Assembly (NCBI RefSeq): GCF_006345805.1 | Contig: NW_021833450.1 | Span: 9,491 to 73,490 of the forward strand | DNA from: Octopus sinensis | Lineage: Eukaryota | Reading direction: 5' to 3' | Length of the DNA stretch: 64,000 bases | Shown here: one piece after another, positions 3,731 through 29,352 of the stretch | How the letters are laid out: each line of letters opens with the position of its first letter | Numbering within the stretch: position 1 is the stretch's first letter | Position numbers and translations under genes: made by a program | Notes under the pieces: generated by a model | Told to the model about the DNA's origin: nothing | The model's database searches: none | The model's input: the letters and a program-made list of their open reading frames with translations, nothing else

Positions 3731-3885
3731 TTCGCTAAATATTTTTCATTACCGAAAGTAATTAATATAGTACTAAATTTTCATTAATCCGAAATAATAA
3801 AACACTTCACTATAACCGCGTCTCCCCTCATGTTTACGAAAATGAAAAGAAGAAAAAAATTCATTTATCCATTTTCTCTTTTCAG

Positions 3886-4113
3886 GAAAATGCCCCTTGG
3901 ATATTGTTAACAGGGTTTATCTCCCTAGTAACAATGTTATTGGATACAATCATATTAATTATACGACGTGTTTATATCATTGTGAAACACACTCATATTG
4001 TCAGTCGACTGACTTCGAAGTCGGTAATCGAAGATGCTATTTGTCAAATAAAAAGCATTCTGATATTGTTTTGAAGCTTGGGACAGGCAACATTTACACT
4101 GAATTAAACAGAG
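3886..4113 (+). CDS. PAN/Apple-domain exon of the plus-strand PAN gene copy (phase 1-1, 228 nt)
   Basis: Acceptor ttttctcttttcag|GA, donor AGAG|gtaagt; translates KCPLDIVNRVYLPSNNVIGYNHINYTTCLYHCETHSYCQSTDFEVGNRRCYLSNKKHSDIVLKLGTGNIYTELNR with PAN Cys spacing C-x3-C-x5-C-x11-C; a paralogous exon at 28790-29020 has identical splice positions. Confidence 0.85.
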
Positions 4114-4343
4114 GTAAGTGCAAAGCTCTTTCATGTTTTGTTGGACTTTTAGCCACAGTCTATTTGGACGATACTGAGGCTCCACCTTTAGCTGTTATGT
4201 TATCCCAATAATTTCTTTTAACCTTTATTGAGTGGTTGAGTCCAAGTTTGGCTTTAAGTGATGTAAAAATACTGATGGATTAAGTAAGTACCAAACTACT
4301 GCTCATTCATTCATTCATTCATTCATACATACATACAACATAC

Positions 4344-4382
<39 letters not shown>

Positions 4383-4467
4383 AACATATTGTATATATAT
4401 TACATATATACATAAATACATATATAATTACATACATACATACATATATATATACATATATATATAC

Positions 4468-7320
4468 ACTAGCATTATGACCCGGCAACGCCTGGTCATA
4501 GTGCTAGTTTGGTATAAATTTGTGAAATTAAAAATTTGGGGTAATAAAATATACAATGACATATTAAAAAAGACGAATTAAAATTCCAGAGAAAAATACA
4601 TAGAAGATAAATAGACAAATTTACAAAAATGCATAAAAGTTCATCTACGGGCCGTTTCGGAGATGCACCAATTAATATGAAACATATCATATATTTAAAA
4701 TTGACACTCCCCTCGTCAGGATGTATTTTACACACAACACATCGTTTCTTCATTACTCATAAAGGGCTACACAGAGGAGACAATACAAACATTGAGAACA
4801 TGAAACATCACAATTACATAAATATGGAAAATGGAATATGAAAATGATAAATGAAAAATGAAAGTGATGCTAACGGCCCCATCCGCTAGCATCACTTACC
4901 TGTCCTTTATCCTGAATGTAATACACATCGTGCTCTATTTTCATCGCAAATCTCTTTTCCATTTCCGTTATTATCTCGTCATCTATTTCAAATCTAAACA
5001 ATTTATAGTTTTTCTTTTTACATTTTTCCACGAATTCTTCTATACGTTCTTCCGAGATTACAGCGTACCTATCACTGTCCTTGTCACACCAGTGATAGTC
5101 TTTCAATATTTCTTTTACGTCGAAATACCTAGAAATTTGGGCCCAGGTTTTTTTGCGGTATCTTGTCTATTTGCTTCTTTTTTTTTGTTTTCTTGTTGGT
5201 GGGGAGCGGGTGGGTTCACTGTCTGCAGGAGAAGGGTGGGTCTCAGAGGGTGCGGGTTGTGTTGGGGTGGATTGGGGTTCAGCACTATTTATTTTTCTTC
5301 CTTCTTCTCTCCCTCCTTCTTCTGCCTTCTTCCCATTCTTTCTGTACCTCCTCCTCTTCCGTTGTGTCTTTCTTCGTTGATTTCTACTTATCCTCGTTGG
5401 CCACTACCTCTCTTTGAGGTTCCGCATCAATTTCCTTTGATGGGGGAGGGCAGTAGCTCTTATGTGACCTTTCAGGCCACACTTGTAGCAGCGTGGAGCT
5501 CTGCCCTCCACCCACACTCTCATAATAACATTCCCATTCTGATATTCTCAGTCAATTGTTCCAATATTTCAGCCTCTGCTTGCACGTTAGTTCCAAAACT
5601 GCACCCTTCCAGCCTTCATCTTTCACTGTAGCATGGAAGATGTCAACTTCTTCCTCACATCCACTGATTACGGCTGCCACTATCCACTCTCCGTCAACAT
5701 TAGGAGGTATCCTCTCCGCCTTGATCCGAGTAGTTTTTCTACCCAGATATGAGGGCAGAAGGAACACCTTTTCTGTCTTCACTGTTCTCGTTGCCATTTT
5801 CCTCGCCACACTTTCATTCTTCAATTGGACCACCACGGTACCGAAATTTATGCCTCTTGCCAAGAATATTATGTCTTCCGTTCTTTTTAATGCTTCTACT
5901 ATTGTCTCGATACTGACGACTTCTATTTTCTTTTTTTCATTGGCATAAACCCGGTACGTGATGGTCCTTCGTTCATGCTACTCACTTCGTTTTGGTGGCG
6001 GTGACAACTCCACTTCACCGCCGACCTTTTTAATAAATGCCTGGTAGCTTGGCAACTTGGCCAAGACTATTTCTCTTTCCTCCGTTCTTGTCGCTCCTGC
6101 GTATGTGTAGCCTAATTGCTTGTCCATTTTCTTTATCGCCTTTTCAAGTTCTTCTTCAGAAGTCGATAAATCTGACACACTTTCGAACATACTTCGTCTG
6201 GCCATCTCTCCATTAGGGAGGAGCAGCCCACTTCTTCCTTGTCTGTCTCAACACAGACAGACAAAAACCCCCAAAACCATGTAACAATAACGTTTAACGA
6301 TAAAAATTAACAATCAACAATAAAACAGCAACTCACAGGTTCAAATAAGAAGCACAATAACACACAACACATAGTACACGGAAACAAATGCACAATTACA
6401 TACCTGCTACATGCGAAAGACCAGACATTACGTACTCCCCAAAATTCTCATAGATACTGAATGCTACTTTATAAGCATATAATTAAATCTAGCAGCTATA
6501 GTAAGTGGTATGCGCACAGCTCCAACTGGACTAATTCACTTCTGCACTCAATTAAATTTTTCATATTTTAATTTCTCCCATTCATGCAAAGCCACATATT
6601 CGAGTTCAATTCCTTCATACATCTTATATTAATTGCTATTTTTTCTTTTAATTGTTATATATTTTTAATAAAATATATATTTTTAATAAAATAAAATATA
6701 TTTAATTACTACTTACTATATTTACTATATTTAATTCAATTGTTATTATTACCTCTAACTTTTATTGCAATTTTTATTTCTAAATTTCTTATGGAACGTC
6801 GAGTGGATCTTATGCGTACAATATATTTTTATATGATGTTTATATATTTTAGATATTACTACATATTAAAACGTCGGGCTTATGTCTGTTCTGTAGATAT
6901 AAATGAATATATGAATATATGTATGTGTTTGATCTATCTGTGGATTTTGTAGTGCTCTTGGTTGCTGCTCGCATTGCCTCCCCTCGGATTAAAAAGTGTA
7001 TACAGCTCATTTGAACACTGCTATTCCAGTCTGTTATATATTTTGAGCGTTGTTGTCACTAACGATCTCAAGATATAACTTATATTTTGTAATATATATA
7101 TATATATATATATATATAACACCCATATACATACAAAGAGATATATGTTTTTGTTTCACTTTTAACACGTAATACTGAAATAGTGGAGAAGATATGATAT
7201 TGCTGTGGGCTCGCTCTAGGCAAGAAGCAAGGCATGTGTAAAATTTGAATGAAATTGGTGGTGTAGTTCTCAAGTTTTAGGGAAACACACAGACAGACAC
7301 ACATTCTCAGTTTTTATATA
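4468..7320 (-). mobile_element. Composite element: hairpin-ended Helentron/HINE-like shell containing a decayed gag-like (CCHC zinc knuckle) ORF1 and a hammerhead motif
   Basis: Terminal hairpin ACTAGCATTATGACC-x11-GGTCATAGTGCTAGT (4468-4508); minus-strand ORF pieces 6205-4870 incl. VWVEGRAPRCYKCGLKGHIRA(frameshift)CP; right end TGTTTTTGTTTCACTTTTAACACGTAA...ACACACAGACAGACACACATTCTCAGTTTT; second related copy at 13465-14810. Confidence 0.65.
4642..4723 (-). ncRNA. Type I minimal hammerhead ribozyme motif
   Basis: Minus strand: CATC-CTGACGA-GGGGA...TCTCC-GAAAC-GGCCC-GTA-GATG. Complete core, 4-bp stem I, 5-bp base of stem II, 2-bp stem III, GUA cleavage triplet. Confidence 0.7.
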
Positions 7321-7329
<9 letters not shown>

Positions 7330-7360
<31 letters not shown>

Positions 7361-7377
7361 TAATAATAATAATAATA
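7330..7377. repeat. (TAA)n microsatellite
   Basis: Direct read of the sequence. Confidence 0.95.
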
Positions 7378-8420
7378 GGGAGGGAGTAAATCCAAACTTA
7401 CAGGGAAAAAATTAGATTAGGATTAAATCCAATTTTACAGTATAAATATATATATTTATATCAAATTAGAGATAAATATATTCGTAGTATTTATTTGATA
7501 CTATATAACTACGGATTGATTATTTCATTAAGTGTTTTATTATTTCATTTTAGTTTCTTAACTATACGATTTTTGAAAGTTATTAGTTCGCCAACGAGAT
7601 GTATGGATCGTTAATTAGTTATAGCGTTCTTTTAAGATTGTTTGTTTGTTTACAATTATCTATTTCATCTATAATCTTTTAATATTTTTATAAGTAATAA
7701 TGAATAATTAATTTATTAAGTCTTTATTATACGTGAATACATATTTATTGATAGAGATAATTTTAGATCTTAATTCTTATATTTATATACATTTATATAT
7801 TTTCATTGATAATTTAGTTAGTATTCAATATTATATAATTATTTGACTTGAAATTATATTTAATAATATGAATAGTCATTTTTTTTTACAATATTTATGT
7901 AATTAGATATTGACTATAACTGAGATTAGATTATTTGTGGGTTTCTTACCTTAAAAATTAATACTTAAAAATTAATATTTAACATTATAATCGATGTATG
8001 AATATAATCAATCGTTAATGTTCTAGTTTGATAATAGAGTTTTTTATAAGAAAAATTATTATTTATTTATTTCTTTAAAAATATTGTTAAATGTTTGATT
8101 ATTTATTAAATATTATAATTAACCTGAAGATTGACTATAACCATAATTCGAATTATTAATTGAATTTAAATTATTGTTATTCGAATTAGATTATGGGCAG
8201 GAAACGATCGTAGTGGTTTTACTCTTTATCTTATATTAAACTTTTAATTCGTTTTGATAGTTATATTTATTAAAAAAATAATAATAAAAATAAAAATAAT
8301 ATATATATAAATTCATAAGTATAAATTAATAATTAAATATTTTTAAAATTTTAACTTTAAATTTAAATTTAAATAATTTAAATTTTGAATTTATATTTTG
8401 TATATTTGTATTATATTAAT
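7378..8420 (+). mobile_element. Very AT-rich interspersed repeat carrying a hammerhead-like motif (probable Penelope-like or retrozyme derivative)
   Basis: Starts right after (TAA)n, no convincing ORF, contains CTGAAGA...GAAACGATCGTA at 8124-8212. Family assignment is inference. Confidence 0.45.
8121..8215 (+). ncRNA. Type I hammerhead ribozyme motif, weakened stem I
   Basis: CTGAAGA (8124-8130); long stem II TTGACTATAA/TTATGGGCAG plus TAATTCGAAT/ATTCGAATTA; GAAAC-GATC-GTA (8201-8212) with palindromic ACGATCGT; stem I only 2 bp. Confidence 0.55.
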
Positions 8421-8498
8421 TAATTTATTTCTATTATTGGTTTATGTTTCACTGTTGATTTGCCTAATAGTGGGTTTATCTCTAATTTATATAAAATA

Positions 8499-8545
<47 letters not shown>

Positions 8546-8599
8546 TATTATATTATTAGTGTGTGTGGTGTGTGTGTGTGTGTGTGTTGTGTGTGTGTA

Positions 8600-9382
8600 C
8601 AACGTGTCCCAAAAGTCACTATACACTTCTTTTTTTCTATTTCGTTTCAGGTATCATTCGGAGAGTCATGTGACCATCAACATTTAACACCTTAGGCTTT
8701 GCAGTTATTTAAGTGTATCATTCCCTTGCCCATGGCACACCATACCATCAGCTTCGAAGAGTCTCGTTCGTGTTCGAGAATTTCTGCTGGTTTTGATTTT
8801 CCCCAAATTCGACAATTGCGTTGGTTTACCCGATCAGAGAGATGAAAGATAGACTCATCGCTGAACCACACGTTTTCCAAGAACTGAGAGTCATTTTGGT
8901 AATTGTAGAGGAGTGATTGACACATTTCCACACCATGAACATCATGATCTTCCACTTGAAGTCTTTGAAGAACCCAATGTCGGTACGGATAGAGCTTTAT
9001 CACTCTCTGAAGCATCTACTGAATCAAGCTTTTGTGATAGTAAGTTCCAGCGCAGTCCTTCGTGGTTGTCAAGAACAGATCCTCTTTCGAGAAACTTGCT
9101 ACGGATAGCATAATTGTGCTACGCGTTGGAGCTGTGTGACGGCCATGAACCCTGTCAAACTTGCGAGATGAAATGCAGTAGGGGGACTGAAAAACTTCCT
9201 GCCTGGCGGGAATTTTGAAACGTTGCTCTAACGTCAGACGGCGAGCCATGGGCAAGGGAATGATACACTTACAAAAACTGTAAGACCTAAGGTGTCAAAT
9301 ACTGATGGCCTCACGTCTCTCCAAATGATACCCGAAACGAAATAGAAAAAAGAAAGCGTATAGTGACTTTTGGGACACCCTG
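8600..9382 (-). mobile_element. Tc1/mariner-superfamily (maT/DUF4817-like) DNA transposon, internally deleted
   Basis: ~65-bp TIRs (CAACGTGTCCCAAAAGTCACTATAC.../...GTATAGTGACTTTTGGGACACCCTG) flanked by TA; minus-strand MARRLTLEQRFK... and VWFSDESIFHLSDRVNQRNCRIWG; the C-terminal catalytic part is missing. Confidence 0.85.
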
Positions 9383-9384
9383 TA

Positions 9385-9395
9385 AATATATATAT

Positions 9396-9451
<56 letters not shown>

Positions 9452-9575
9452 GTATATATATATATACTACATACATACATACATACATACATACATACAT
9501 ACATACATACATACATACATCAAAGACATGCATGTATACGTACGAACATTATGTATGTATGCATGTATGTATGTA
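9385..9575. repeat. (TA)n/(TACA)n microsatellites
   Basis: Direct read. Confidence 0.95.
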
Positions 9576-11933
9576 CCGTATTTGCCGGCAGATTGGACGC
9601 GCTTTTCTTATTTTTAAATGTATCAAATGCGTCTAATGTGGCCACATTACGGAAGGGAGGCCGAGCGCCGTAGGCTAGGGAGCAGGGACGAGCGTACTTG
9701 GAAGTTCTCTTGGCGCAAAAACTGTTGCTCTAATAGAATAATCAGAACAAGCCAAATCATTACAGTAAATTGTGTTACTAATAATAAAATGTTGAAACAA
9801 GCCGAATTATCACAGTCTGTTATCACAAACTTACGAAAGATTGATTACGATACGCTGTCATCACCTCACTTACCTCGTTCCCCAACATCTGATATATAAA
9901 TACATTATTTAAAGAACTAGGTTACATTTTATGAACATTTCTTCTTATCTAAATGAAAAATGCTCCTAGAAAGTTGAATGGAATGTTAAACTTTCATCCA
10001 CCTGGCAGCCATTTGCAATGATCAGACCTGATCATATGTCGGAGGCATCGCTTGTACAACAGCGCCTCTTCTTGTTGTGTTCCATTCTTGGTCATTCATT
10101 TGTGTTTGGTTCTTTAGTCTTTTTTCCCTTATTTTCCAATTTGTGGTCTGTCGCGGTAACACAAAGCATCACATCCAGAAATACGAGTTTCACATCCTGT
10201 ATAGCATTTGCTGTTTCCCAAAATATAAACAACTATACAGCTGATCTGAGAGGAGGCAAGAGTTGGGGCAAGGTTCCCATAACGTATCGGTAAGTTGACT
10301 TACGATCAATTTCGCACAGATTGCAACACATGGCTGAGAAACTAGATGTCGTAGCAAACGCAAAGGACCACGGTAATAGGGCAGCCTGCTCGGTATTTTG
10401 GTCTACCACCGACCGACAAAATGCTAAGACTTGGCGGAGGAAACAGGAAGAGTAGCTAAAAGCTGCTAAACGTATCAAACACTGCCTCCGTAGGGGATTC
10501 ATAAAGTGGTCTGAACTAGAAGAAGAATTAAAAACATGAGGTTTAGACCAAAGAAGATCGAGCTTTTTCATCCCACTAAAATGGTTATGCACCGTTCAAG
10601 ACTTATAGCAATGGACTGAGATATCAACGATTTTAAAGGGTAAACATCACGGTTGTCCCATATTTATGGGGAGAAATAAAAATGTTCCCTGAATACGAAA
10701 ATTAAATACATAAGTTTCATAGGTACCACATCTGTGCAAGAAAACAAATTAATTTTGGACTTTCACACAGATAGTAAATATGGTCGAAGTCTTTGACATT
10801 TGATGTGCCATCAAACAAGGCAGTAGAACCCAAGGGTGCTAAAACTCTGACTGTTAAAACATGTGGCCATGAAAAGACACGCTACACAGTTGTATCATCA
10901 TACTGCGCTGATGGCACAAAACTTTCATCTTTTTTAATTTTTAAAGGAAAGACATAGCCTAAAAAAAGGATATCCAATGGCATTTATGTTCTTGTCCACC
11001 CAAAAAGATCGGAAGGATGAGGGAGGAATGAAATCATGACTTGACAAAGAGTGGTCCAGGCGTCCTGGTGGACTATTAAAGAAACCCGCTTTATTAGTTT
11101 GAGACCAGTTTCGGGCTTATAGAACTGAGCTTGTTAAGAGGAAACTTGGAGAACTGAAGACTCAGTTAGCTATAATCCCAGCCTAACCTGCTATAATTCC
11201 GGGACGCCTAACCAGCGGTAATTCCGGAAGGCCTAACCAGTCTTTAAATGTTTCACTCAATAAACCATCTAAAAGATTCCTTCGGGTGGGGTGGAGCAAG
11301 TGGACGCAGTCTTCAGATTTTGAAGTAACACGAACAGGAAGAAGGAAGAGGCATACTATATTGCACAGGTGTGTGATTGGGTAAAAAGTTCATGGAATGC
11401 TGTAAAAGAAGAGGATGCTGTGAAACCATTTAAAAAAAACTGGTATTAGTAATGCCCTTGATGGTATTATTTGAAGAATATATCGCTGATACAGACCCTT
11501 TTGCAGAGAATTCTAGTGATGAAGAGAGTACCGGTAATATTGATGGCAGCAGTAAGAACGAGAAACTTTAACTATCAATAAGAATTTATCCCTTTTATTG
11601 CACTTCGCTGATTGGTTTCTCCCAGTTTTTATCTGTATATTTGCTTTTTGTTTGCATAGACCAGGTTTCATTAATACCAACATTCTCTTTCGCTATGGCA
11701 AATTAATTTTGTTTCCTTTAAAGGTGAGTGTAAAGCTACATATGACTTCATATTTTATTCCTCTGTACTGTCACATTATTGTATTTCATGCGCAGAATCA
11801 TACAATTGTCACCACAAAACAACTTTCAATAAATCCATGATGAAACATACTAAAATTGTTTTTTCCGCAAAATATCCTTGTAAAATAAGGATGAGTCTTA
11901 TGTGAGGGTGCATCCAATGCGCTGGCAAATATT
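9576..11933 (+). mobile_element. pogo-family (POGK-like) DNA transposon, decayed, with both TIRs
   Basis: TA|CCGTATTTGCCGGC left TIR with a degenerate right TIR GCGCTGGCAAATA; transposase remnants LDVVANAKDHGNRAA (Brinker-type HTH) and LTFDVPSNKAVEPKGAKTLTVKTCGHEKTRYTVV (DDE_1 region), with stops and frameshifts. Confidence 0.8.
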
Positions 11934-12128
11934 ACACACACACACACACACACATGGTATTAGTAATTAAATTTCATAGACGGACTTTATAAATATTTTA
12001 ATGCAGCGCTACGCGAGTTTCCACAAATCACGTATTTCTTGTGATCACAGTCCGTATTCCGGAGATGATTACGGTACAATCCGTGGATCATAGTTTCTGC
12101 GTTCTTACATCATTTTTTTCCATTTCAG

Positions 12129-12215
12129 AACTTTTGAATAATTTCAGTCAGTCACATACATTGAAGGACATCAGCTCCGTAGGATGTGCTTTCGGCTCCT
12201 ATTATTTCGTTAATA
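12129..12215 (+). CDS. Short linker exon of the plus-strand PAN gene (phase 1-1, 87 nt)
   Basis: ttccatttcag|AA ... AAT A|gtaaga; LLNNFSQSHTLKDISSVGCAFGSYYFVN; the paralog at 23647-23742 keeps splice sites and frame despite a 9-nt indel. Confidence 0.75.
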
Positions 12216-12911
12216 GTAAGACCATTTTTATTTAGTTGTTTATTTTTAGTGTTCTTTGATTCTGTGTCTTGTTCCTGATCTTTAATTCATCGATCTTCTG
12301 TCTCCAGTGCACGCCGAACAAAACTGAAAATTTTAAATATCTCTTTCTTCCGCAACGCAAAAAATAAAGAAATTTATAAATATCGTTTTTTTTTCTTCAT
12401 TTCATGATTATTTCTACTTAGCGTCTTAATTTTTAGTTAAATAGATAATAAATAAATTAATAATTAATAGTCATGCAGAAAGATGTAGTAAAACTAACAC
12501 ACAAGTACATTTAAAATCTGGCAGATGGGTTAATATTAATCCTCACTGTCATTAAACATCTCAACACGCTTCGTTACTAACTTGCTCAGAAATACCTTAA
12601 TGCATCTCGCTGGTAATACGAGAACAACTTTACCTCCGAGATAACCAGCCACATGCCCCTTCTCATTCTCCCGTCATACATGCTATTTCACCAGCCAGAT
12701 CCCTCATCAATTATTATTCCCAATCCCCCCTTTCTAGATTATGCAACTCACTCCCCACTCACACTAACCTAAAGATTAATAACATCGATCTATCGAATCA
12801 ATAGACCATATCTATTCGTTTCTCTTGTACCTTGTCAATAAAGAGAAATAATTTAATTTGTGTTGTTATATTTCTTGTGTTTCCTCTTTCTATTTATTTT
12901 TTCTATTGTAG

Positions 12912-13100
12912 AAAAAGAAATTAATGATTTGACAGCTTATTCAACTTTTCCTTCAAACCAAATCCATATCTCAACCTTGTAATCGATGCCCAATGGATGC
13001 TCACTCGGTTCTGGATTGTTCACGTTTATGTATGATATCTTCTAAATGTATCGCCTTTTCATATACTAACACTAAGTGCGTGCTAAAGAAACTGATCTGA
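12912..13100 (+). pseudogene. Terminal PAN exon of the plus-strand copy with two 1-bp deletions (premature TAA at 12980-12982)
   Basis: ~93% identical to the open exon 22839-23029; one T is missing in the T run at 12946-12949 and one base near 12993. Could be real disablement or assembly indels. Confidence 0.75.
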
Positions 13101-13464
13101 ACTTTAATGGAATTATGACTTCTCAATGAAATGTGAGCACGACTTCAACGGATCACGTTTGCTGATAATAATTCTATCAGATAAAATGTGTATTTCTTTG
13201 TGAATAAAATCAATTTAATTAAGATAATTCCTTTGTTAATTTATTTTTATTTCTCATGTTTTTCTTTCAAATTAGTCTTCTCTTATAAACCCATTCACAC
13301 ATTTGAAGGTTTATAAGATTATCGAATTTACTCTTGTACAAATGAAGCAATGGGTATTATTTTATCGACCTTCAAAGAATGGACAGAATTCGATCGCAAA
13401 ACGTGACGGTTCTAAACTAAATACCACAAACAGTTAAAACGAATCTTTAACCCATTATCTAAAT

Positions 13465-19039: not shown

Positions 19040-20110
19040 CGGTGCTGAACACAGGGTTTGCAGTATTACTTCATTCACTTAGTTTTCCATGTTCACACTT
19101 TCATCGCCTTCCAAGTATTGTCCATTTGATGTAATGCATCGGTCCAGACGCGTTTTCCAGTCTTCGAAGCGGTCTTGGAACTCTTGCGAAATGATCGTCT
19201 CCGTCGCTTTTTTTTTCACCTCTTTCACATCTGCAAAATATTTTCCTTTAAGGACTTTTCTCATTCGGGAGAACAAAAAAATATTGCAGGGAGCAAGACC
19301 GGGGCAACAGGGAGGGTGGGTAAACGAGGTCATGCCATTTTTGGTCAAAAACTGTCTCACACTGAAGGCGGTGTCCGAAATTTCTTTGTCGTGATGAAAC
19401 CACCCCACCCCACTTCTGCCACGGGTCGGAACGATTTCGTCTCGTCGTGCCTCGCAAACGCTTCAGAAATGCTTCCATTGACTTGATCGCCCTATCGTTT
19501 CCGGGTTGTAGCCGTAGCACTAACTTTCGTCACTTCAAAAAAAGGGTCCGGATCCATTTCCAACTGTTCTTTCACTTCGCGACACGTATTTAGTCGTGAC
19601 TGCTTTTAATTTTCCGTGAGCAAGTGAAACACAAGTTTTGCTGCAACTCTTTTCATTCGCAATTTCTCGCTCAAAATTCATTGGAAAGAGCTCCAAGAAA
19701 CACCAGTCATATTAACAAGTTCATCAATTGTTCGGCGACTGTCCTCCAAGACCAGTTTGTGAATTTTCGTGATGTTTTCATTCGTTCTGGAGGTCGACGG
19801 TTTCCCTGAATGATATTGGTCTTCAAGCGGAAAGTGACCATTACTAAAACGTGAAAACCACTAGTTTTGCTCATGGTAGAATCCTTGTAAGCTGTTTGAA
19901 GCATCACAACTGTTTCCGCCGCCGTTTTCCCAGAAAGAAAAAAAAACAGAATTTTGCGGAAGCATGCTGTCCCTTCGTTTCAACCATCGCAATAATCTAC
20001 GAACAAGGGAGAAGCAATGCAAAACAAAGACGCACCACGTGACGAGTCCTGACTTCGACGTCAGTCGGGAGACTGACACCTGAGGGATGCATCAAGTGGA
20101 TTCTAGCGGC
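19040..20110 (-). mobile_element. Mariner (DD34D) transposon, decayed
   Basis: Minus strand KTAAETVVMLQTAYKDSTMSKT (HTH), WFHHD, HPPCCPGLAPCNIFLFSRMRKVLKG, DWKTRLDRCITSNGQYLEGD. Ends not resolved. Confidence 0.85.
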
Positions 20111-22838
20111 GGAAGCTTAAACTACAACGGGCTTGTTCCGCAGAGAAAGTTTCCGGTTACTTTTGGTTACTCTTTCGTATTGGTGTTGACAAATAATTGT
20201 GTCCCCTAATATTATGATGGTTCCTCGGTCATGAGCGGAGGAATCGCTGGTGTTCATGCGAAATTGCATGTCGCAGCCCCATTTGCAACTTGTGTCAGCT
20301 TCCACCAACAGAACCTAGATGTAGATAACTTCTTAACAAAAATGTAAAGGCTATCGGGGAATTTTTCGTCATACAGCAGCAACTTAACCTGTTTATGGAT
20401 CGATTCAGAGTGCATCAGTAAAAACAAGTACTTACAGGAAGAAAAACGAGGATAACCAGCAGAGAAGAAAATCTTCTCCTATACACGATGGGCCAGTCAG
20501 CGGGTACCGTGCTATGCTGTTCATTATGAGCTTTCATTTATTGACATTCTCCCTCATTTCAGTGAGGTTATCAAGTCATGGGAGAGGCAAATTAAAGAGG
20601 AATGTTTCTGTAACGTTTGTCTATGAAAGTTTGCGCTCTCGTCTTCGCTAAACAGGTTTTAATACAAATCAAGTCTTTAGCAAAAATATTACAAATTTTC
20701 ACTGCTGTGACTACAGCAACAGAAATGGTATCCAGTTAAACATCTTCATGTCAAACGAAACGAAAGTTTTGTAGCCTCCGATTAAGTAACAGATAGTGAA
20801 GATATTATGCTCAACCAGCTGACTCGAGAGAAACCTAATCTGCAAGGCAATCTTAACAGCATTTGGAGGCCTCAGCGGCTAGTGTGAGAGTGTTGGAAGC
20901 CGGCTGAAAATTCAAACCACAATTCCTATATTGAACCAGGTTTGCTTAGAGTTCCGACACCGATGTTCGGCATAAAATGGTGATATCATGATAAACCTCT
21001 TATCTTATTTCTTTATTGCCCACAAGGGGTCATGATAAACCTCTCTTATCTTACTCCCTAAATTCCCCAGTTTCTGAATATGGTTTGTCTCAACTTCATA
21101 GCAGATACATTTCAACTGAACTTGGATACCCTGATATCAGAATGCCACTATGCAAAGCGACTCATCGGGTGGAAGTGACACATTTTGATCTCATTAACCG
21201 ATTTACTTGAGATTTTGAATCTCTCTATGGATTCCTCGTTTGAACTAATCGAACTGCTGCAAGAAGATGTAACACTGCCTGTAAGCACACGGCAGGCTAT
21301 GAATGAATACTTTCTCAAGGTGTGGATGATCAAGTCTTATCTGAAGGATTCCACAGTAAACAATAAACCAGACAATGTATGCCCAGTTATTATGAATAGA
21401 TGATGTATCGAAAACCTGAATCTTGAAGACATCCGCTTTCGTTTTTCGACACAACACCGAAAAGAGAATTGCTTTCGAGTAGTTTGTATTTTCATAACGT
21501 ATAACAGATACTGCTAACTTTTTATTTATTTGACATTCCAATCACATTCAGAAGTTGACTGTAAATAAATTTGATTTATTCAATTAAAATTCAAATTTTT
21601 TTAATACAAATTCTCTGCCTGTGCTTAAAGTTTTTTAAAACTAAATCTACCTGGGCCACCACAAAACAATTGGATCACCACTGCTCCAGAACATTAATCG
21701 TCTGAAATTCGATCTCTGATCACATTTTCTTTATACAAATATTCAAACGAAATATTAACCGTATCGATCTCACCAATCCACAAAGGCTTGAAAACATCAC
21801 GTCGATCCCACTCCCATCTCCCCTCTTCACCAAACTATAAACAAAGAATCCAATATTAATCTAAAACTTAACCAATGAAAACAAAAGGAACATTTTTACG
21901 ACATTTATGGTCAATATTTCAATTTATGTTTTTCACACCGAAAACTATTTCAACCTTTCGATAACCTGAAAGAAATTGTTGAGCTGCTGAGTTTCTGAGC
22001 GAATGTCTATTAAATTTCGTTTTTCGTATGACTGATTTCTTATTTTCGTTTTAACTGTATTTCACTCTGCTAATAAGCTGCAAGTAAGTTGCTGAAGCAA
22101 AATTTCATCCATAGAGAAGAACATAAATTTTTTATTTTAATTTCACTTTGTAATCCTTGATAAAATTAATTTAGACTTGCCAACTTAAATAGTTTCTGAG
22201 AGACCAGAGGTAAAACTCAAATTAACAATCATATTACCTAAGGTTTTCGGTGCTTACTTACATTGCAATGGCCGTACAATAATTCCCGTAGACTATTTAC
22301 CATATTCTTCAGAAAAGTTTTCCATGTTATTTTTCTTTAATTTGTTTTCTTTCTTTTTTTTTAGTTTGAATAACAAATGATTTCACTTTTTAAGAGAAAT
22401 CAATCAAATGCAATTATTTTATCTCATATATTATTTAGATGATGGGTAAGAAGTGTTAAAGATTCGATTTAACTGCTTCTAGAATTTAGTTAAGACCCGT
22501 TACGTTTTGAAACAAAATGCTGTCCAGGTTAACTTAGTGTTTCATTCTTTGAAGGTCGATGAAATAACACCCAATTGCTTCATTGGTACTCAAGTAAATT
22601 TAATAATCTTATAAACCTTCAAATGTGCGAATGGATTTATAAGAGAAGACTAATTTAGAACGAAAAACGTTAGGAATAAATATAAATTAACAAAAGAATT
22701 AACTGAATTAAATTGAGTTTATTCACAATGAAACACGCATTTTATCTGATAGAATTATTATTAGCAAACGTGATCCGTTGGAGTCTTGCTCACATTTCAT
22801 GGAGAAGTAAATAATTTTGGGGTGAATTCCATTAAAGT

Positions 22839-23029
22839 TCAGACCAGTTTCTTTAGCACGCACTTAGTGTTAGTATATGAAAAGGCGGTACATGTAGAAG
22901 ATACCATACATAAACGTGAACAATCCAGAACCGAGTGAGCATCCACCTGGGCCTCGGTTACAAGGTTGTGATATGGATTTTGTTTGAAGGAAAAAGTTGA
23001 ATAAGCAGTCGAATCATTAATTACTTTTT
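22839..23029 (-). CDS. Terminal PAN/Apple exon of the minus-strand PAN gene (phase 1 start, TGA stop)
   Basis: Acceptor tttcatttttattgcag|AA; KVINDSTAYSTFSFKQNPYHNLVTEAQVDAHSVLDCSRLCMVSSTCTAFSYTNTKCVLKKLV*; PAN core C-x3-C-x5-C-x8-C. Confidence 0.85.
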
Positions 23030-23646
23030 CTGCAATAAAAAATGAAAGCGAAATCACAAGAAATACAAGAACATAAATGAAATTATTTCTCTTCAGTGAC
23101 AAGGCACAAGGGAAACGAATAGATATGGTCTAATGATTCGATAGATCGATTTTATTGATGTTCCGTTTGGGCATCTTTAAGTTAGCGTGAGTAGGGAGTG
23201 AATTCCTGAATGTTACCTAATCTAGAAAGGAAGTATCGGAATAATAATTGATGAAGAATCTGGCTGGTGAAATAGCACGTATGGCGGGAGAATGAGAAGG
23301 GGTATGTAGCTGATGATCTCGGACGTAGAGAGATTCTCGTATTATCAGCGAGTTGTATTGGGGGATTTCTGGGCAAATTAATAATTAATATTAATCCATC
23401 TAGCAGATTTTAAATGTACCTGTGGATCATTTGCAAGGGTATTAATTATTAATTCACTGCTAATCTATTTAACTAAGTATTAAAACTCTAGGTAGCAGTA
23501 ATGATGCAATGAGGAAGAAAGAGATATTTATTAATTTAATAATTTGCCGACAAGAACAGGAGAGAGAAGATCAATGAATTAAAGATGATGAACAAGAAAC
23601 AGAAACAAAGAACACACACAAAAAACCTCAATAAAAACGGTCTTAC

Positions 23647-23742
23647 TTTCAACGAAATAATAAGAGTCGAGAACTCTTACACCACAACCGACGGAATTAA
23701 TCTTCTCCAGTGTATGTGACTGTCTGAAGTCATTCCAAAGTT
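23647..23742 (-). CDS. Short linker exon of the minus-strand PAN gene (phase 1-1, 96 nt)
   Basis: ttccattccag|AA ... GAA A|gtaaga; LWNDFRQSHTLEKINSVGCGVRVLDSYYFVE; paralog of 12129-12215. Confidence 0.75.
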
Positions 23743-23917
23743 CTGGAATGGAATAAAAATGATGAAATGAACGCAGGAACTATGATCCACCCGACGTCCA
23801 TCATACTACGAAATACGGACTATGATCGCAAGAAAACTGTGATTTGTGGAAACTCGCGTAGCGCTGCATTAATTATTTATAAAGTCTATCCATGAAATTT
23901 AATTAATAATACGATAA

Positions 23918-24005
23918 TATACATACATATACATATACATACATACATACATACATACATGCATACATACATACATACATACATACATACATACATACAT
24001 ACAAT

Positions 24006-24088
<83 letters not shown>
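23918..24088. repeat. (TACA)n + (TA)n microsatellite
   Basis: Direct read. Confidence 0.95.
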
Positions 24089-24090
<2 letters not shown>

Positions 24091-24139
24091 CTAGTTTATT
24101 TTGTCTCTCTGTCTTCTCTATGGGCGCGATATGAACATT

Positions 24140-25680
24140 TAAGGTGGTTTTAGGGCCAGGGTTTTGACTGGTATTTCAGCATGGTGGTATCTCTCAGGTA
24201 CCTTAATTTATAGTTTTAAATAATTATTACCTTTGTATGGTATTTATTCCCATGATGGCTACTTGATAAGATCGATATTTAAATATCGATATTATCCTTA
24301 TTAATATATATAAATATGTATATATATATATATACGATAAGAAATGGACTAATAAATTGCAGTGAAAAGTGGATCAACTAGCGATGAATGAAATTAAAGT
24401 AATCTTAGAAGCGAGAGAATCCATAATGAATTTCGATAACAAACTATAGGTAAGGAAGGACACGCCTAATAACTTCGATATCACTATGCGAGCACCAGAT
24501 TCATCACAGATAACTGACTTAGTAGGAATTTACTTATCAAATTTACAGGAAGAATTCTCGGAGATCAAGGGTTGTCTCTACAGGTATGACGCACTATTTA
24601 TATTGAAAAACATCTCAAATAGGAGATTAGAACTCACCAAGAAAACATTTTGGCCTAACTATTACTATAGAAAAGGAACATACTTCTATAAACTACTTAG
24701 ACGCTTATTGCAGCCTAACCACAGGACAACATGAACCCTACATAAAATCGAATACAAACCTTAAATATATAAACGCATTGAGTAACCATCCCAACTTTAT
24801 TAAAAGAGGACTAGTACAAAGCAACAGCAAAATAATTTCACGCCTCTCTTCCAACGAATATCGCCAAACCCTATTTATCCACGAAATATCGCTAATCCTC
24901 ATTTTACAGGTTATAAGCGAACCTGTTTAACCTCTTATTACCTCCCCTTAACTGTTCCACGTACCAATTAGCACTACTCAACTCCACTCCTCATTATAAA
25001 CTAATTACTCAACTGTATACTTATTTTACATACTACGGTATTTTCCTATAATTTAATTTCATTTAATAACTAGACGACCGATTCATTTTAATGCTATAAT
25101 TTTCCCATCGATCTTGTTTTTCTATGCACTCTTCAACCCTTTCTATTGTTCCTTTACTTAGCCCATTATACACACTATATCGTACATATTTTAAATAATA
25201 ACTTTATCCTTATACTACGGCTTCCATTGAAAATACAGGAACTAACTTACAAGCTATAAATTAGTGTTACGTAGGTCCAAATAACTACAACGGATATCTC
25301 CAATAGCGATAAGTCACTCGGATTACACCGGCGGTCAACTAGTAATTAGCATTAGATGTTAGAACCTACGGACACGTGGAATTTGGAATTATGAGACTAA
25401 TTAATTATAAGACCAAGGATTTAACTAACTCTCTTCTCTTCTATCCTCCAACTGGTATACTGAATTAAGGACCTCCCTAAAATCTAAGACTATTGAACTA
25501 ACAAACATTCTTCCAGTTTTTCCTTTCCTTTCCTTACATTTTCTTTCTATTTTCCTTCTATTCATCTTTGCCATATAATCGTTATGATGATGTCTATCAA
25601 TTGCAATGAGGTAAATGCAAATTTACCCCAGCTTGATATACTGAAACAACTCTAAGCATATTCTCATCTTAATTAAATAA
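24140..25680 (+). mobile_element. Penelope-like element remnant (RT C-terminal part plus 3' region with a degenerate hammerhead)
   Basis: GCLYRYDALFILKN (degenerate YRDD motif of PLE RT) and HPNFIKRGLVQSNSKIISRLSSNE (PLE thumb); relic TGATGA-stem-GAAAC at 25585-25646. Confidence 0.6.
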
Positions 25681-26009
25681 TGACTTTAAAACACCAATGA
25701 TTTACTTATCACTGTTATTTATTGCTCCATTTCTTATCGTCTTTATATATATTAAACCACCGTTTTACCTTTAAATTACCTACTACCGTATACCTTATAA
25801 CAAGGACCATACATACTGAGGTATGTATGTAGAATTCTTCTACATATATTTCGATGGACGCACTGTTATATATATCCTTCCTGATGAGATCGATGCATTG
25901 ATGAACATAATTTTTCCTGCCGGACATTTTGCAGTACATCCGTCGCGATATATGTCGAAGAATTCAAGATATAAATGGTGTAACAACATCCCAAGACTTC
26001 TCCTGGGCA

Positions 26010-26605
26010 CATCAGATGTCGAAGAGACTTCGACCATATTTACTATCTGTGAAAGTTCAAAATTAATTTGTTTCCCTGCACAGATGGCATACCTATGAAA
26101 CTTAAGGATTTGATCTTCTCATTCATTCAGGGAACATTTTTATTTCTCCTCATAAATATGGGACACCGTGATGTTTACCCTTTAAAATCGTTGATATCTC
26201 AGTCCATTGCTATAAGTCTTGAACGGTGCATAACCATTTTAGTGGATACTGAAAAGCTCGATCTTCTTTGGTCTAAACCTCATGTTTTTAATTCTTCTTC
26301 TAGTTCAGACCACTTTATGAATCCCCTACGGAGGCAGTGTTTGATACGTTTAGCAGCTTTTAGCTACTCTTCCTGTTTCCGCCAAGTCTTAGCATTTTGT
26401 CGGTCGGTGGTAGACCAAAATACCGAGCAGGCTGCCCTATTACCGTGGTCCTTTGCGTTTGCTACGACATCTAGTTTCTCAGCCATGTGTTTGAAATCTG
26501 TGCGAAATTGATCGTAAGTCAACTTACCGATACGTTATGGGAAACCTTGCCCCAACTCTTGCCTCCTCTCAGATCAGCTGTATAGTTGTTTATATTTTGG
26601 GCAAG
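26010..26605 (-). mobile_element. Internal fragment of the same pogo element as 9576-11933, inverted
   Basis: Near-identical reverse complement of 10215-10815, including shared stop codons. Confidence 0.85.
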
Positions 26606-27060
26606 AAGCCCGCCCAGAAGAGTTGCAGAAGATTCCAAAGTCGTCTGGAGGATGTGGTTGAAGCCAATGGCAATTTTATTGAATAAATTAACTCTTTAGT
26701 ATTTTAAGATATTTTTATGTAATTTTGGTAAATATGTTAAACTGAGATGTTAGTGTTATTTTCAGTAAAGGCTATTTGCCAACATAATGTGGCTGTCCTG
26801 GAAGGGACAATTGTTACTGTTGTTAGCCTCAGGAAACATGGTTTCCAGATGGCTATACGACACAATATTTGTGTCGTTATATCTTCCTGTGGTGGATGGG
26901 AGTGCTGGACTCGCTGTTCGAAAATATAAGGACACAGATATTGTGTCGTATAGCCATCTGGAAACGATGTCCTTTCCAGGACAGCCACATTATGTTGAGA
27001 AATATTCTTTACTTTAAAGAACTGTTATTTTCATTTGCATAATTTAGATGCCGCACCCAG

Positions 27061-27061
<1 letters not shown>
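26606..27061 (+). mobile_element. 3' end of a Tc1/mariner-type transposon, interrupted by a foldback element
   Basis: RRFQSRLEDVVEANGNFIE* (transposase C-terminus) and a TIR-like end GATGCCGCACCCAG|TA. Confidence 0.55.
26765..27012. mobile_element. ~250-bp imperfect palindrome (MITE/foldback)
   Basis: Outer arms GTAAAG...CAACATAATGTGGCTGTCCTGGAA / TTCCAGGACAGCCACATTATGTTG...CTTTAC; inner arms TTTCCAGATGGCTATACGACACAATAT / ATATTGTGTCGTATAGCCATCTGGAAA. Confidence 0.8.
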
Positions 27062-27159
<98 letters not shown>

Positions 27160-27282
27160 TGTGTGTTAGATAATAATGCGAACGGTTTACACCTGATAGC
27201 TCACTGGTAAAGCACGGTCGAAACAAATGTCGCTATTGATAATAAATTCTCGTATATTCCATCTTCCGTCTTTCATTTGCCA

Positions 27283-27367
<85 letters not shown>

Positions 27368-27384
27368 GTATATCAGAAAATAAA

Positions 27385-27712
27385 AAAACAGAGATAAATG
27401 AAATGATAATTATTTATTAATTACAAATTTGGACATCATTTCTGACAGCTGTTTTGATTCAAGACTTTAGAAATTAATTAGTATAATTAAAAACATACTA
27501 AAGTTGAATCACATCGGAAAGTTTTGCTCCCTACACTCAACACACAATAATATGAAAATGTAAAGGTATATCTTTCCCCACCTCTGATGGGATTCAACTT
27601 TAAAATCTTTTTAATTATACTGATTGATTTCTAAAGTCTTGAATCGAAACAGTGTCAGAGACGATATCCAATTTTGTAATTAATAAATAATTATTATTCT
27701 ATTTATCTCTAT
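27385..27712. mobile_element. Inverted-repeat element (~100-bp arms) containing a degenerate hammerhead; PLE pseudo-LTR-like
   Basis: Arms 27385-27492 and 27608-27712; + strand CTGATGG-GATTCAA...TTGAATC-GAAAC-AGT-GTC at 27584-27656 (A9 changed to G). Confidence 0.6.
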
Positions 27713-27899
27713 TTTCTTATTTTCTTAAATATATAAAAATCTCGGTTCATCTTACAGTTGAATATTAAATGCAATATCCAATACTTTTTCCAATAGGCAA
27801 TAAACCTTTATATTTATTGGATTTTATTATCCGTTAATGAAGTTTAACCTTTAATTGAACTTTTATATGTAATGTGCTGATCCGTATAGTGAAAGATAA

Positions 27900-28440
27900 A
27901 TATTATTCCTTTAAAGGTCACAATACATTATTAAAGCGCTACTAATAGTTTCATATGTTGAGAACACTCAAACATATTCTTCAGGCGCAAACCAAATATT
28001 ATAACGAACGAAAGAAATTGAATAATAGTAGAAACGCGAAAAAACTGAGAAGGCACCATATAAAAACGCAGACAGTAAACAACGGAAAACGAAAATAGAA
28101 ACTAAACTGTCAAAAATATAATGTAAAAAAGGTAAAAGAGCTATGCTACTGACACCTTGAAAGATACGGCTGAAAAAGATAACAAGCCAGTCAGAAATAG
28201 GTGGAAGTTTCCAGTTCTTCAAGAAATATTTATACATATGCATGCAACCACTGAAATTTCTGACCTGGGGTTCAATAGAGAGTTAGGGATCTTGGATTTG
28301 AACATAATCTGCAATTTTTTTTTAGCCAAAAAAAGTTTACATTTATTCGATCCGTTCACATTTATTTCTCCACGGTGTATTTGTCTTTAGCAGTTGAAAT
28401 ATATGACAAACATATTTCAACTAACCTAATTGTGACTATA
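27900..28440 (-). mobile_element. Penelope-like element 3' end (GIY-YIG C-terminus plus pseudo-LTR)
   Basis: Minus strand, with frameshifts, KCKLFLAKKKLQIMF...LLNPRSEI...CMHMYKYFLKNW matches the PLE endonuclease tail C-x-LCL-x-EK...LLN-x-RSE...C-x-H; followed by a hammerhead motif. Confidence 0.7.
27936..27988 (-). ncRNA. Type I minimal hammerhead ribozyme motif, complete core
   Basis: GCGC-CTGAAGA-ATATGTTTGAG-TGTT-CTCAACATAT-GAAAC-TATTA-GTA-GCGC: 4-bp stem I, 10-bp stem II with one bulge, GUA triplet. Confidence 0.8.
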
Positions 28441-28533
28441 CGTAAACACTGCTCAGCGTATTTACTCCGATATATATATATATAACGGGAAAGTTTACCA
28501 AAATAAACAAAAGACGAAGGCAGGTGGAGTACA

Positions 28534-28588
<55 letters not shown>

Positions 28589-28789
28589 TGTGTGTGTGTG
28601 TGTGTGTGGTGTGTGTGTGTGTATGAGTGATCAATAGTTTGGTATTTAATTAGTCCATCAGTTTACTCACATCCTTTAAGGCCAAAGAAATTATTGGAAT
28701 AACATAATAAGCTAAAGGTGGGGCCTCAGTATCGTCCAAATATACTGTGACTAAAAGTCCGATAAAATATAAAGCAACTTTGCACTTAC

Positions 28790-29020
28790 TTTTGTTTAAT
28801 TCAGTGTAAACACCATTTGTCCCAAACTTCAAAAAGTGATCAGAATGAGTTTTACTTGACAAAAAGCATTTTTTTGTATATATTTGGTAGTCAAACGACT
28901 GACAATTTGGTTTTGTTTCACAGCTGTACAAACATGTCGTATAATTAAGACCATGCAATCCACCGACGTCATTGCGACTAGGGAGATAAGCACTGTCAAC
29001 TATATCCAACGGACATTTTC
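28790..29020 (-). CDS. PAN/Apple-domain exon of the minus-strand PAN gene (phase 1-1, 231 nt)
   Basis: ttttctcctttcag|GA ... AAA A|gtaagt; KCPLDIVDSAYLPSRNDVGGLHGLNYTTCLYSCETKPNCQSFDYQIYTKKCFLSSKTHSDHFLKFGTNGVYTELNK. Confidence 0.85.
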
Positions 29021-29352
29021 CTGAAAGGAGAAAATGGACAAATGAAGTTTTTCCTTCTTTTCGTTTTCGTTTTATTTTGGATTAATGAAAAATAATAAAT
29101 AAATGAAAAATATTGGGTAAAGACACAACAACAATAACAACAAAAATAATGTCTTCCTCTTTTTCTCTATCACTTGACTCTGTAAATGAATAATCTGGTG
29201 TGTTTGTTTTTATGGCCTACCAATGTAAACAATACGTTTCACTGCCCCATGTGTCAGGAAGACACTCGGCAAGAAATGGAAACAGAAGTGAAAGAATATG
29301 CTAATAAAAATGAAAATAATAATAATAATAATAATAATTATAATAATAATAA

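What the first reader, a model, noticed from the sequence alone, without database searches (positions are those of the whole stretch)
3770..29100. Convergent pair of multi-PAN/Apple genes formed by a >13 kb inverted duplication
Seen: three orthologous exons and long flanks recur in reverse orientation, with each arm later inflated by different TEs. The minus copy extends to at least 42.7 kb and predicts a protein of about three PAN domains separated by short Cys-containing linkers. Established: PAN/Apple domains mediate protein or carbohydrate recognition in extracellular proteins. Inference: a lineage-specific, expanding recognition or secreted-protein family that the ORF track misses because it is split into small exons.
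Basis: partly seen in the sequence, partly recalled or inferred. Interest (0 to 1): 0.72.

Follow-up and report, generated by a model that had tools for sequence, protein, structure and literature searches.

The report
Tail-to-tail octopus PAN/Apple gene copies
Two copies of an octopus-specific gene for a small secreted protein built from three PAN/Apple binding domains lie tail to tail; one is intact and the other is damaged, which is an ordinary gene-family duplication and not a new kind of system.

Summary
The window is Octopus sinensis contig VCDQ01005557.1. Four collinear reverse-complement blocks join 3836-17046 to 20246-29070, at 75-96% identity. They carry three paired exons: PAN B, a Cys-bearing connector and a truncated terminal PAN.

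The minus-strand copy is a complete six-exon gene (45754-22839). All its splice sites are AG/GT. It encodes 280 aa: a signal-peptide-like N-terminus plus three Pfam PAN_1 domains. RefSeq already models it, N-terminally truncated, as LOC118761543.

The plus-strand copy has intact PAN B and connector exons. Its last exon has two 1-bp deletions and a premature TAA. No protein in the database corresponds to it, and its first three exons are not in the window. It is probably a pseudogene or truncated copy.

The tail-to-tail junction is also present in a second O. sinensis contig and at the matching O. bimaculoides locus. It is therefore old and not a misassembly. Patches of 96-100% identity between the arms point to later gene conversion.

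Relatives with E<1e-10 that I named are all from octopods. PAN B is the variable module (47% mean aa identity, against 78-84% for the other two), but dN/dS is below 1.

Function is untested. The best guess is a secreted binding or lectin-like protein. Verdict: new member of a known kind, modest interest.

The parts
45724..45754 (-). Minus gene coding exon 1 (ATG, MLERNCLQII; first part of the signal-peptide-like N-terminus), GT donor
   Evidence: Aligned with exon 1 of the paralogues in L003/L005/L006. Coordinates and splice sites.
43433..43468 (-). Minus gene exon 2 (FLFYISLTFGNG; rest of the signal-peptide-like segment), AG/GT
42442..42699 (-). Minus gene exon 3 = PAN A (258 nt, phase 1-1)
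   Evidence: Pfam PAN_1 at 28.2 bits against a cut-off of 21.4. Splice sites. The sequence upstream is conserved intron, not coding.
28790..29020 (-). Minus gene exon 4 = PAN B (231 nt, phase 1-1), the variable module
   Evidence: 100% identical to P0001/LOC118761543. PAN_1 hit. Splice sites.
23647..23742 (-). Minus gene exon 5 (KLWNDF...VGC...YYFVE; connector with one Cys)
22839..23029 (-). Minus gene exon 6 = truncated PAN C plus TGA stop (22841-22839)
   Evidence: PAN_1, PAN_2 and PAN_4 hits.
3886..4113 (+). Plus copy exon 4' = PAN B' (open frame, AG/GT intact; 59% aa identity to the minus exon 4)
12129..12215 (+). Plus copy exon 5' (open frame, AG/GT intact, 9 nt shorter than the minus exon 5)
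12912..13100 (+). Plus copy exon 6', disrupted. There are 1-bp deletions in the T-run at 12946-12949 and between 12992 and 12993, and a premature TAA at 12980-12982.
   Evidence: The sequence is identical in the second contig.
3836..17046 (+). Left (plus) arm of the inverted duplication: blocks 3836-4401, 10214-10809, 11954-13468 and 15010-17046, with arm-specific insertions between them
20246..29070 (-). Right (minus) arm: blocks 28538-29070, 26006-26604, 22429-23915 and 20246-22329
17047..20245 (.). Spacer between the arms. The part from about 18059 to 20245 is the continuing 3' flank of the minus gene. It contains a mariner-like ORF (19082-19462) and a short dispersed repeat (18551-18746).
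   Evidence: Collinear with the 3' flanks of paralogues in L005, L006, L007 and L008. The mariner call is by eye only; Pfam gave no hit.
29021..42441 (-). Intron 3 of the minus gene (13.4 kb), filled with reverse-transcriptase retroelements
   Evidence: Pfam RVT_1 on the ORFs 33407-33907 and 37193-38470.
286..2720 (-). Retroelement copy upstream of exon 4'. It is a direct repeat of 33682-36008, so it is not part of the inverted duplication.
   Evidence: RVT_1 on the ORF 245-730.

Best explanation
The region holds two neighbouring members of an octopod-restricted gene family, arranged tail to tail. Family members encode small proteins of about 280 aa. Each has a signal-peptide-like N-terminus, a 4-Cys PAN A, an Apple-type PAN B closed by a Cys in a small following exon, and a C-terminally truncated 4-Cys PAN C.

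The minus-strand copy (45754-22839) is an intact six-exon gene. The plus-strand copy (exons 4'-6' at 3886-13100) is a diverged duplicate whose last exon is frameshifted. It is most likely a pseudogene, or at best it encodes a product without PAN C.

The inverted arrangement arose by segmental duplication of a whole gene unit, introns and 3' flank included. This happened before O. sinensis and O. bimaculoides split. Since then the arms have been stretched by different insertions, and short tracts have been re-homogenised by gene conversion, both between the arms and with other family loci.

Inferred, not shown: the intact protein is secreted and acts as a binding or lectin-like module, with PAN B as the variable, ligand-facing domain.
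For: Shown:
- Inverted collinear blocks.
- A 280-aa ORF across six exons with canonical AG/GT sites and phase-1 domain exons.
- Three PAN_1 stretches, E=6e-17.
- 100% identity of exons 4-6 to RefSeq LOC118761543.
- The window equals VCDQ01005557.1.
- The plus copy's frameshifts and premature TAA, also present in the 99.9%-identical contig VCDQ01003266.1.
- No database protein corresponds to the plus copy; the best hit is 66%.
- Window 14820-23760 is collinear with O. bimaculoides L005 33889-41953, and L005 has its own inverted repeat 36465-37558<->41660-39978.
- An unconverted segment is 69% identical between the arms but 86% identical to its positional orthologue. Three other tracts are 96-98% identical between the arms but 78-91% across species.
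- Window 9400-10226 and 11934-12469 are 97% identical to the P0007 locus.
- All inspected relatives with E<1e-10 are octopod.
- Per-exon divergence: PAN B has 47% mean aa identity and dS 0.63, against 78-84% and dS 0.14-0.16 for PAN A and PAN C.
- The closest solved structures, by profile and by fold, are PAN/Apple lectins and the plasminogen and HGF N-domains.
Against: - No RNA evidence was available, so neither the splicing nor the expression of either copy is shown.
- The signal peptide is judged by eye only: a charged n-region, a 14-residue hydrophobic core and G-N-G before the predicted cleavage site.
- The AlphaFold model of a paralogue is poor (mean pLDDT 38; about 70 only across PAN B). 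The proposed C111-C205 disulfide and the fold of PAN A and PAN C are therefore untested.
- The plus copy's exons 4' and 5' are still open. Its premature stop lies in the last exon, so a truncated protein cannot be excluded.
- Its exons 1'-3' could lie in the 9.5 kb of the contig to the left of the window, which I could not fetch.
- dN/dS of PAN B is below 1 (0.59 between the arms, family mean 0.72). The exon-versus-flank comparison was not robust. Diversifying selection is therefore not demonstrated.
Confidence: 0.8

Rival explanations
1. This is a convergent pair of two functional multi-PAN genes.
For: Exons 4' and 5' of the plus copy keep open frames, all their Cys residues and AG/GT sites. 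Both arms have an AATAAA about 100 nt after the stop position. O. bimaculoides has an intact gene, P0002, on the corresponding side of its cluster.
Against: Exon 6' has two 1-bp deletions and a premature TAA that removes the whole PAN C Cys core. Both contigs carry them, and one of the two is not in a homopolymer. No database protein corresponds to the plus copy. Exons 1'-3' are not in the 3.9 kb upstream, which is retroelement and (TCT)n.
Confidence: 0.15
2. This is an assembly artefact: a single locus folded back on itself, or haplotypes joined head to head.
For: The O. sinensis assembly is redundant here. Two unplaced contigs carry the same locus at 99.7-99.9% identity.
Against: The arms are only 69-100% identical per 100 bp and differ by kilobases of insertions. 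An artefactual fold-back would be near 100% throughout. The centre is assembled the same way in the second contig. The same tail-to-tail junction exists in the chromosome-level O. bimaculoides assembly.
Confidence: 0.02
3. The arm similarity is just shared transposable elements and not a gene duplication.
For: The window is rich in transposons. A 190-bp dispersed repeat (14808-15001 / 18551-18746) and a retroelement (286-2720 / 33682-36008) do recur.
Against: The blocks are collinear and in gene order: exon 4, intron 4, exon 5, intron 5, exon 6, 3' flank. The same non-coding blocks occupy the same intronic or flank positions in the paralogous loci L003 and L005-L008.
Confidence: 0.02
4. Both copies are dead, meaning the minus gene is also an unexpressed relic.
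For: The RefSeq model is truncated to 195 aa without a signal peptide. Several family models are aberrant fusions or read-throughs. Family-wide dN/dS is high, 0.6-1.05.
Against: An 843-nt ORF split over six exons, with twelve correct boundary signals and no stop, is unlikely to survive without selection. The Cys framework and PAN HMM scores are intact.
Confidence: 0.12

Closest known systems
RefSeq 'uncharacterized protein' / UniProt 'Apple domain-containing protein' family of Octopus (LOC118766713 and LOC118761543 in O. sinensis; LOC106868906 and LOC128249715 in O. bimaculoides)
   Same: The exon structure, domain order and 61-72% full-length identity are the same. LOC118761543 is the minus gene itself.
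   Different: The full-length 280-aa reading of the minus gene, with exons 1-2 and all of PAN A, is not in the database; the model there starts at an internal Met. The plus copy has no model at all.
Apicomplexan PAN/Apple lectins (Sarcocystis muris SML-2; Toxoplasma MIC4 apple domains)
   Same: These are the best profile-to-PDB match (2yil, E=4e-4) and are among the top fold matches. They are tandem small PAN/Apple modules in a secreted protein, and they bind galactose (PDB entry titles).
   Different: Identity is only about 20%, and the sugar-binding residues were not examined. They come from a different kingdom, so this is a shared ancient domain and not orthology. No carbohydrate binding is shown for the octopus proteins.
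Plasminogen / HGF N-terminal PAN domain and factor XI / prekallikrein Apple domains
   Same: They share the PAN fold and the Cys core C-x3-C-x5-C-x11-C. PAN B has the extra outer Cys pair spacing typical of Apple domains.
   Different: There are no kringle or protease domains. PAN C is truncated after its fourth Cys, and PAN A lacks a conserved outer pair.
Multigene families with conserved flanking exons and one hypervariable exon, kept similar elsewhere by gene conversion (for example conotoxin or MHC-type patterns; from general knowledge)
   Same: PAN B shows far deeper divergence (dS 0.63, aa identity 47%) than PAN A and PAN C of the same genes (dS 0.14-0.16). Conversion tracts are seen in the introns and flanks.
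   Different: dN/dS is below 1 in 20 of 21 pairs. No site-level test was done, and no ligand or tissue is known.

Membership tests
PAN/Apple domain superfamily (Pfam PAN_1 PF00024) | HMM score above the curated gathering threshold | tested here: met
   Single exons score 23-28 bits against a cut-off of 21.4. The stitched minus protein scores 61.6 bits over three stretches. The plus copy's PAN B' scores 24.2 bits.
PAN/Apple domain superfamily (Pfam PAN_1 PF00024) | Conserved four-Cys core (C-x3-C-x5-C-x11-C) | tested here: met
   Minus protein: C53/57/63/75, C138/142/148/160 and C254/258/264/275. The PAN B core Cys are nearly invariant across the family.
PAN/Apple domain superfamily (Pfam PAN_1 PF00024) | PAN fold (a helix packed on an antiparallel sheet) | tested here: inconclusive
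   The AF2 model of paralogue P0003 has mean pLDDT 38, with only PAN B (residues 113-190) near 70. All the Foldseek top hits are PAN/Apple structures, but the E-values are only about 1e-3.
Apple subtype (factor XI-like, six Cys) | Third disulfide joining the N- and C-terminal ends (C1-C6) | tested here: inconclusive
   The spacing C111-x26-C138...C160-x44-C205 fits for PAN B only, with the closing Cys in exon 5. The model is too poor to check the distance.
Octopod triple-PAN family (LOC118766713-like) | Six coding exons giving signal peptide, PAN A, PAN B, connector and truncated PAN C in one open frame | tested here: met
   Met for the minus gene. Not met for the plus copy, which has a premature TAA at 12980-12982 and no exons 1'-3' in the window.
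Secreted proteins | Cleavable N-terminal signal peptide | not testable with these tools
   No signal-peptide predictor was available. MLERNCLQIIFLFYISLTFGNG has the n/h/c layout by eye.
Genuine inverted segmental duplication (as opposed to an artefact) | Independent assemblies and an orthologous locus show the same junction | tested here: met
   The second O. sinensis contig is 99.9% identical across the centre. O. bimaculoides L005 is collinear and has its own inverted repeat.
Galactose-binding PAN lectins (SML-2/MIC4 type) | Conserved sugar-binding residues and measured glycan binding | not tested
   Only domain-level similarity was found.

The most novel reading that the evidence does not exclude
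The family is an octopod-specific repertoire of secreted recognition proteins. In this reading one exon, PAN B, is kept diverse. The rest of each gene, its introns and its flanks are repeatedly homogenised by gene conversion, helped by inverted and tandem neighbours. That would be a cassette-like diversification system for ligand binding, in immunity, mucus or egg coats, prey or chemical sensing.
Probability: 0.2. Interest if true: 0.55.

Novelty: new member of a known kind. Interest (0 to 1): 0.3.

Why it matters
The finding has three modest uses.

- It corrects the gene model of LOC118761543 to a full-length 280-aa secreted-type protein.
- It documents an unannotated degenerate neighbour.
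- It shows that an inverted gene-pair junction has persisted since before two Octopus species split, with later conversion tracts.

Cephalopod-specific expansions of secreted proteins are of interest for lineage-specific biology. This one has no known tissue, ligand or phenotype, and its building block, the PAN/Apple domain, and its mode of growth, segmental duplication, are both ordinary.

Tried and rejected
- **Lost start codon.** TBLASTN seemed to align the paralogues' signal peptides to the ORF just upstream of PAN A, without a Met. This suggested a lost start codon. It was rejected: that stretch is conserved intron in all paralogues, and the real exons 1 and 2 were found at 45754-45724 and 43468-43433.
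- **Block B as a young transposon.** I considered that block B (10214-10809, 96% identical between the arms) was inserted twice. It was rejected because it sits at the same intron-4 position in O. bimaculoides P0002 at 79% identity. Gene conversion fits better.
- **PAN B exon more diverged than its flanks.** This looked true in one alignment. It held for only 6 of 21 family pairs, because the flanks are interrupted by non-homologous insertions. I do not claim it.
- **Structure prediction.** The paralogue model was low-confidence.
- **Mariner-like ORFs in the arms and spacer** (8695-9294, 19082-19462). Pfam gave no hit, so they stay 'mariner-like by eye'.
- **The 5.8-kb O. bimaculoides gap** that should hold the partner copy's last exon.
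- **Literature.** Searches for octopus Apple/PAN proteins or the LOC identifiers found nothing relevant.
- **RNA genes.** Rfam and the tRNA scan found none.
Full report
**1. Source and observation**

The window is 36% G+C. It is identical to positions 9491-73490 of Octopus sinensis contig VCDQ01005557.1, assembly GCA_006345805.1.

Self-BLASTN finds four collinear reverse-complement blocks:
- A: 3836-4401 <-> 29070-28538, 75% identity
- B: 10214-10809 <-> 26604-26006, 94%
- C: 11954-13468 <-> 23915-22429, 76%
- D: 15010-17046 <-> 22329-20246, 81%

The left arm spans 13.2 kb, the right arm 8.8 kb, and the spacer is 17047-20245. A large direct repeat (286-2720 <-> 33682-36008) is a reverse-transcriptase retroelement. 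It is not part of the inverted structure.

**2. The exons**

TBLASTN and the nucleotide alignments give three exon pairs.
- PAN B is flanked by ...ttcag|G and G|gtaagt in both arms.
- A small Cys-containing exon follows.
- A terminal exon encodes the first two thirds of a PAN domain and then a stop.

Pfam PAN_1 passes its gathering threshold on the individual exons.

A database search returned eleven proteins, all from Octopus. One of them, LOC118761543 (195 aa), is 100% identical to the minus-strand exons.

Comparison with the paralogous loci showed that the family's signal peptide is split over two tiny exons. Both are present and intact upstream of PAN A in the window.

The minus gene therefore has six coding exons:

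| Exon | Coordinates |
|---|---|
| E1 | 45754-45724 |
| E2 | 43468-43433 |
| E3 (PAN A) | 42699-42442 |
| E4 (PAN B) | 29020-28790 |
| E5 | 23742-23647 |
| E6 | 23029-22839 |

Every boundary is AG/GT, and the domain exons are in phase 1-1. The exons join into an 843-nt ORF of 280 aa. This ORF gives three PAN_1 stretches, E=6e-17. The RefSeq model is an N-terminally truncated version of it.

**3. Domain reading (from the sequence; partly inference)**

The mature protein has the core C-x3-C-x5-C-x11-C three times. Only PAN B has an additional N-terminal Cys (C111). The single Cys of exon 5 (C205) lies at the distance expected for the closing Cys of an Apple domain. The 'linker' is therefore probably the end of PAN B.

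PAN C ends five residues after its fourth Cys, in every full-length family member.

An AlphaFold model of the 72%-identical paralogue P0003 was poor. Mean pLDDT was 38, and only PAN B reached about 70. Its Foldseek hits are all PAN/Apple structures: plasminogen, SML-2 lectin, the HGF N domain, MIC4 and factor XI. The best profile-to-PDB match is the galactose-binding lectin SML-2.

**4. The plus copy**

Exons 4' (3886-4113) and 5' (12129-12215) are open and have intact splice sites.

Exon 6' (12912-13100) has two 1-bp deletions relative to the minus exon and to all paralogues. This gives a premature TAA at 12980-12982, before the PAN C Cys core.

The same sequence is present in the second, 99.9%-identical contig VCDQ01003266.1. 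One of the two deletions is not in a homopolymer. Either deletion alone would break the frame.

No protein in the database corresponds to this copy; the best hit is 66% identical.

Homology between the arms stops 50 bp upstream of exon 4'. The 3.9 kb to the window edge is a (TCT)n array and a retroelement. Exons 1'-3' may lie off-window, since paralogue introns at this position are 5.5-15 kb. I could not fetch that DNA.

I rate 'pseudogene or truncated copy' as the most likely status, but it is not proven.

**5. Age and reality of the arrangement**

The centre and the inner part of both arms are assembled identically in a second contig.

In O. bimaculoides chromosome CM046617.1 the family members P0002(+) and P0009(-) are convergent. 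A partial exon 4-6 copy, P0012, lies head to head with P0009.

Window 14820-23760 is collinear with the region just past the 3' end of P0009 (L005 33889-41953). L005 carries its own inverted repeat there (36465-37558 <-> 41660-39978).

A segment that escaped homogenisation (15400-15640) is 69% identical between the arms but 86% identical to its positional orthologue. The duplication is therefore older than the species split, and a misassembly is excluded.

**6. Later changes**

Identity between the arms is patchy, from 69% to 100% per 100 bp. The tracts 10214-10500, 15880-16130 and 16850-17046 are 96-98% identical between the arms but only 78-91% identical to O. bimaculoides or to other paralogues. 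This fits arm-to-arm gene conversion after speciation.

Window 9400-10226 and 11934-12469 (intron 4 and exon 5') are 97% identical to the P0007 locus on another contig. The neighbouring exon 4' is only 74% identical to that locus. Exchange between loci therefore also occurs, and genes are mosaics. The minus gene's 3' end is positionally orthologous to P0009, yet its PAN B exon is closest to that of P0002.

Relative to the P0007 locus, window ~4400-9400 is extra DNA.

**7. Family and selection**

An exhaustive HMMER search gave 43 hits. All those with E<1e-10 that I named are from Octopus species or Argonauta hians (36% identity). Weaker hits are generic PAN proteins of cnidarians, rotifers and oomycetes.

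Across seven genomic copies:

| Domain | Mean aa identity | dN | dS |
|---|---|---|---|
| PAN A | 78% | 0.115 | 0.14 |
| PAN B | 47% | 0.44 | 0.63 |
| PAN C | 84% | 0.081 | 0.16 |

PAN B is thus the variable module, with much deeper divergence at silent sites as well. The simplest reading is that the other exons, introns and flanks are homogenised by conversion while PAN B is not.

dN/dS for PAN B is 0.59 between the arms and 0.72 on average, and it exceeds 1 in only 1 of 21 pairs. Positive selection is not shown. A test of 'exon more diverged than flanks' failed to be robust.

**8. Verdict**

This is a tail-to-tail pair of paralogues from an octopod-restricted, automatically annotated but unstudied family of small secreted-type triple-PAN proteins. 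One copy is intact and one is degenerate.

I found no literature on the family. Both the mechanism of origin (segmental duplication, insertions, gene conversion) and the domain type are conventional.

The function, a secreted binding or lectin-like protein with a variable PAN B, is inference from domain knowledge and from the similarity to PAN lectins. It needs expression and binding data.

Noticed in passing
window 12841-52508 vs contig VCDQ01003266.1 (L002): The O. sinensis assembly holds this locus twice, on two unplaced contigs that are 99.7-99.9% identical. They are probably haplotigs, so family copy numbers counted from this assembly are inflated.
   Followed up: partly
window 45754-42442 (-): The RefSeq model LOC118761543 (195 aa) starts at an internal Met of the PAN A exon. 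Intact exons 1-2 and all of PAN A give a 280-aa protein with a signal-peptide-like start.
   Followed up: yes
window 9400-10226 and 11934-12469 vs L008 23415-24922: Intron 4 and exon 5' of the plus copy are 97% identical to the LOC118761606 (P0007) locus on another contig. The adjacent exons are 74-85% identical. This looks like a recent inter-locus conversion or exchange tract.
   Followed up: partly
window 51187-60885 vs L008 28848-33072: DNA upstream of the minus gene is collinear (84-93% identity) with DNA downstream of the P0007 gene. This suggests that the family also exists as head-to-tail tandem units that include this intergenic segment.
   Followed up: no
window 14808-15001 and 18551-18746: A repeat of about 190 bp, present in inverted orientation within the window (88% identity). 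It also occurs in L003, L005 and L007 at unrelated positions, so it is probably a MITE- or SINE-like element.
   Followed up: partly
window 56254-57345 (+): A degenerate Mos1/mariner transposase, with Pfam HTH_48 and Transposase_1 hits in separate frames.
   Followed up: partly
window 60888-63614 (+): A LINE-type element with an endonuclease (Exo_endo_phos_2) followed by a reverse transcriptase (RVT_1).
   Followed up: partly
window 2729-3493; 31850-32086; 52411-52796: Long microsatellites: (TCT)~257 directly upstream of exon 4', a 99% pure (ATT)79, and (ATGT)~98.
   Followed up: no
window 29931-35846 vs L008 15480-22672: Retroelement copies 93-96% identical lie in intron 3 of both the minus gene and the P0007 gene, but in opposite orientation relative to the gene. 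This points to a young, recently active element family that has hit the same large intron twice.
   Followed up: no
L005 32453-32971 (O. bimaculoides LOC128249715, P0009 residues 183-355): The 355-aa model replaces the family's exons 5-6 with a 173-residue non-PAN stretch from one ORF in intron 4. The normal exons 5 and 6 lie just downstream, so this is probably an annotation artefact.
   Followed up: no
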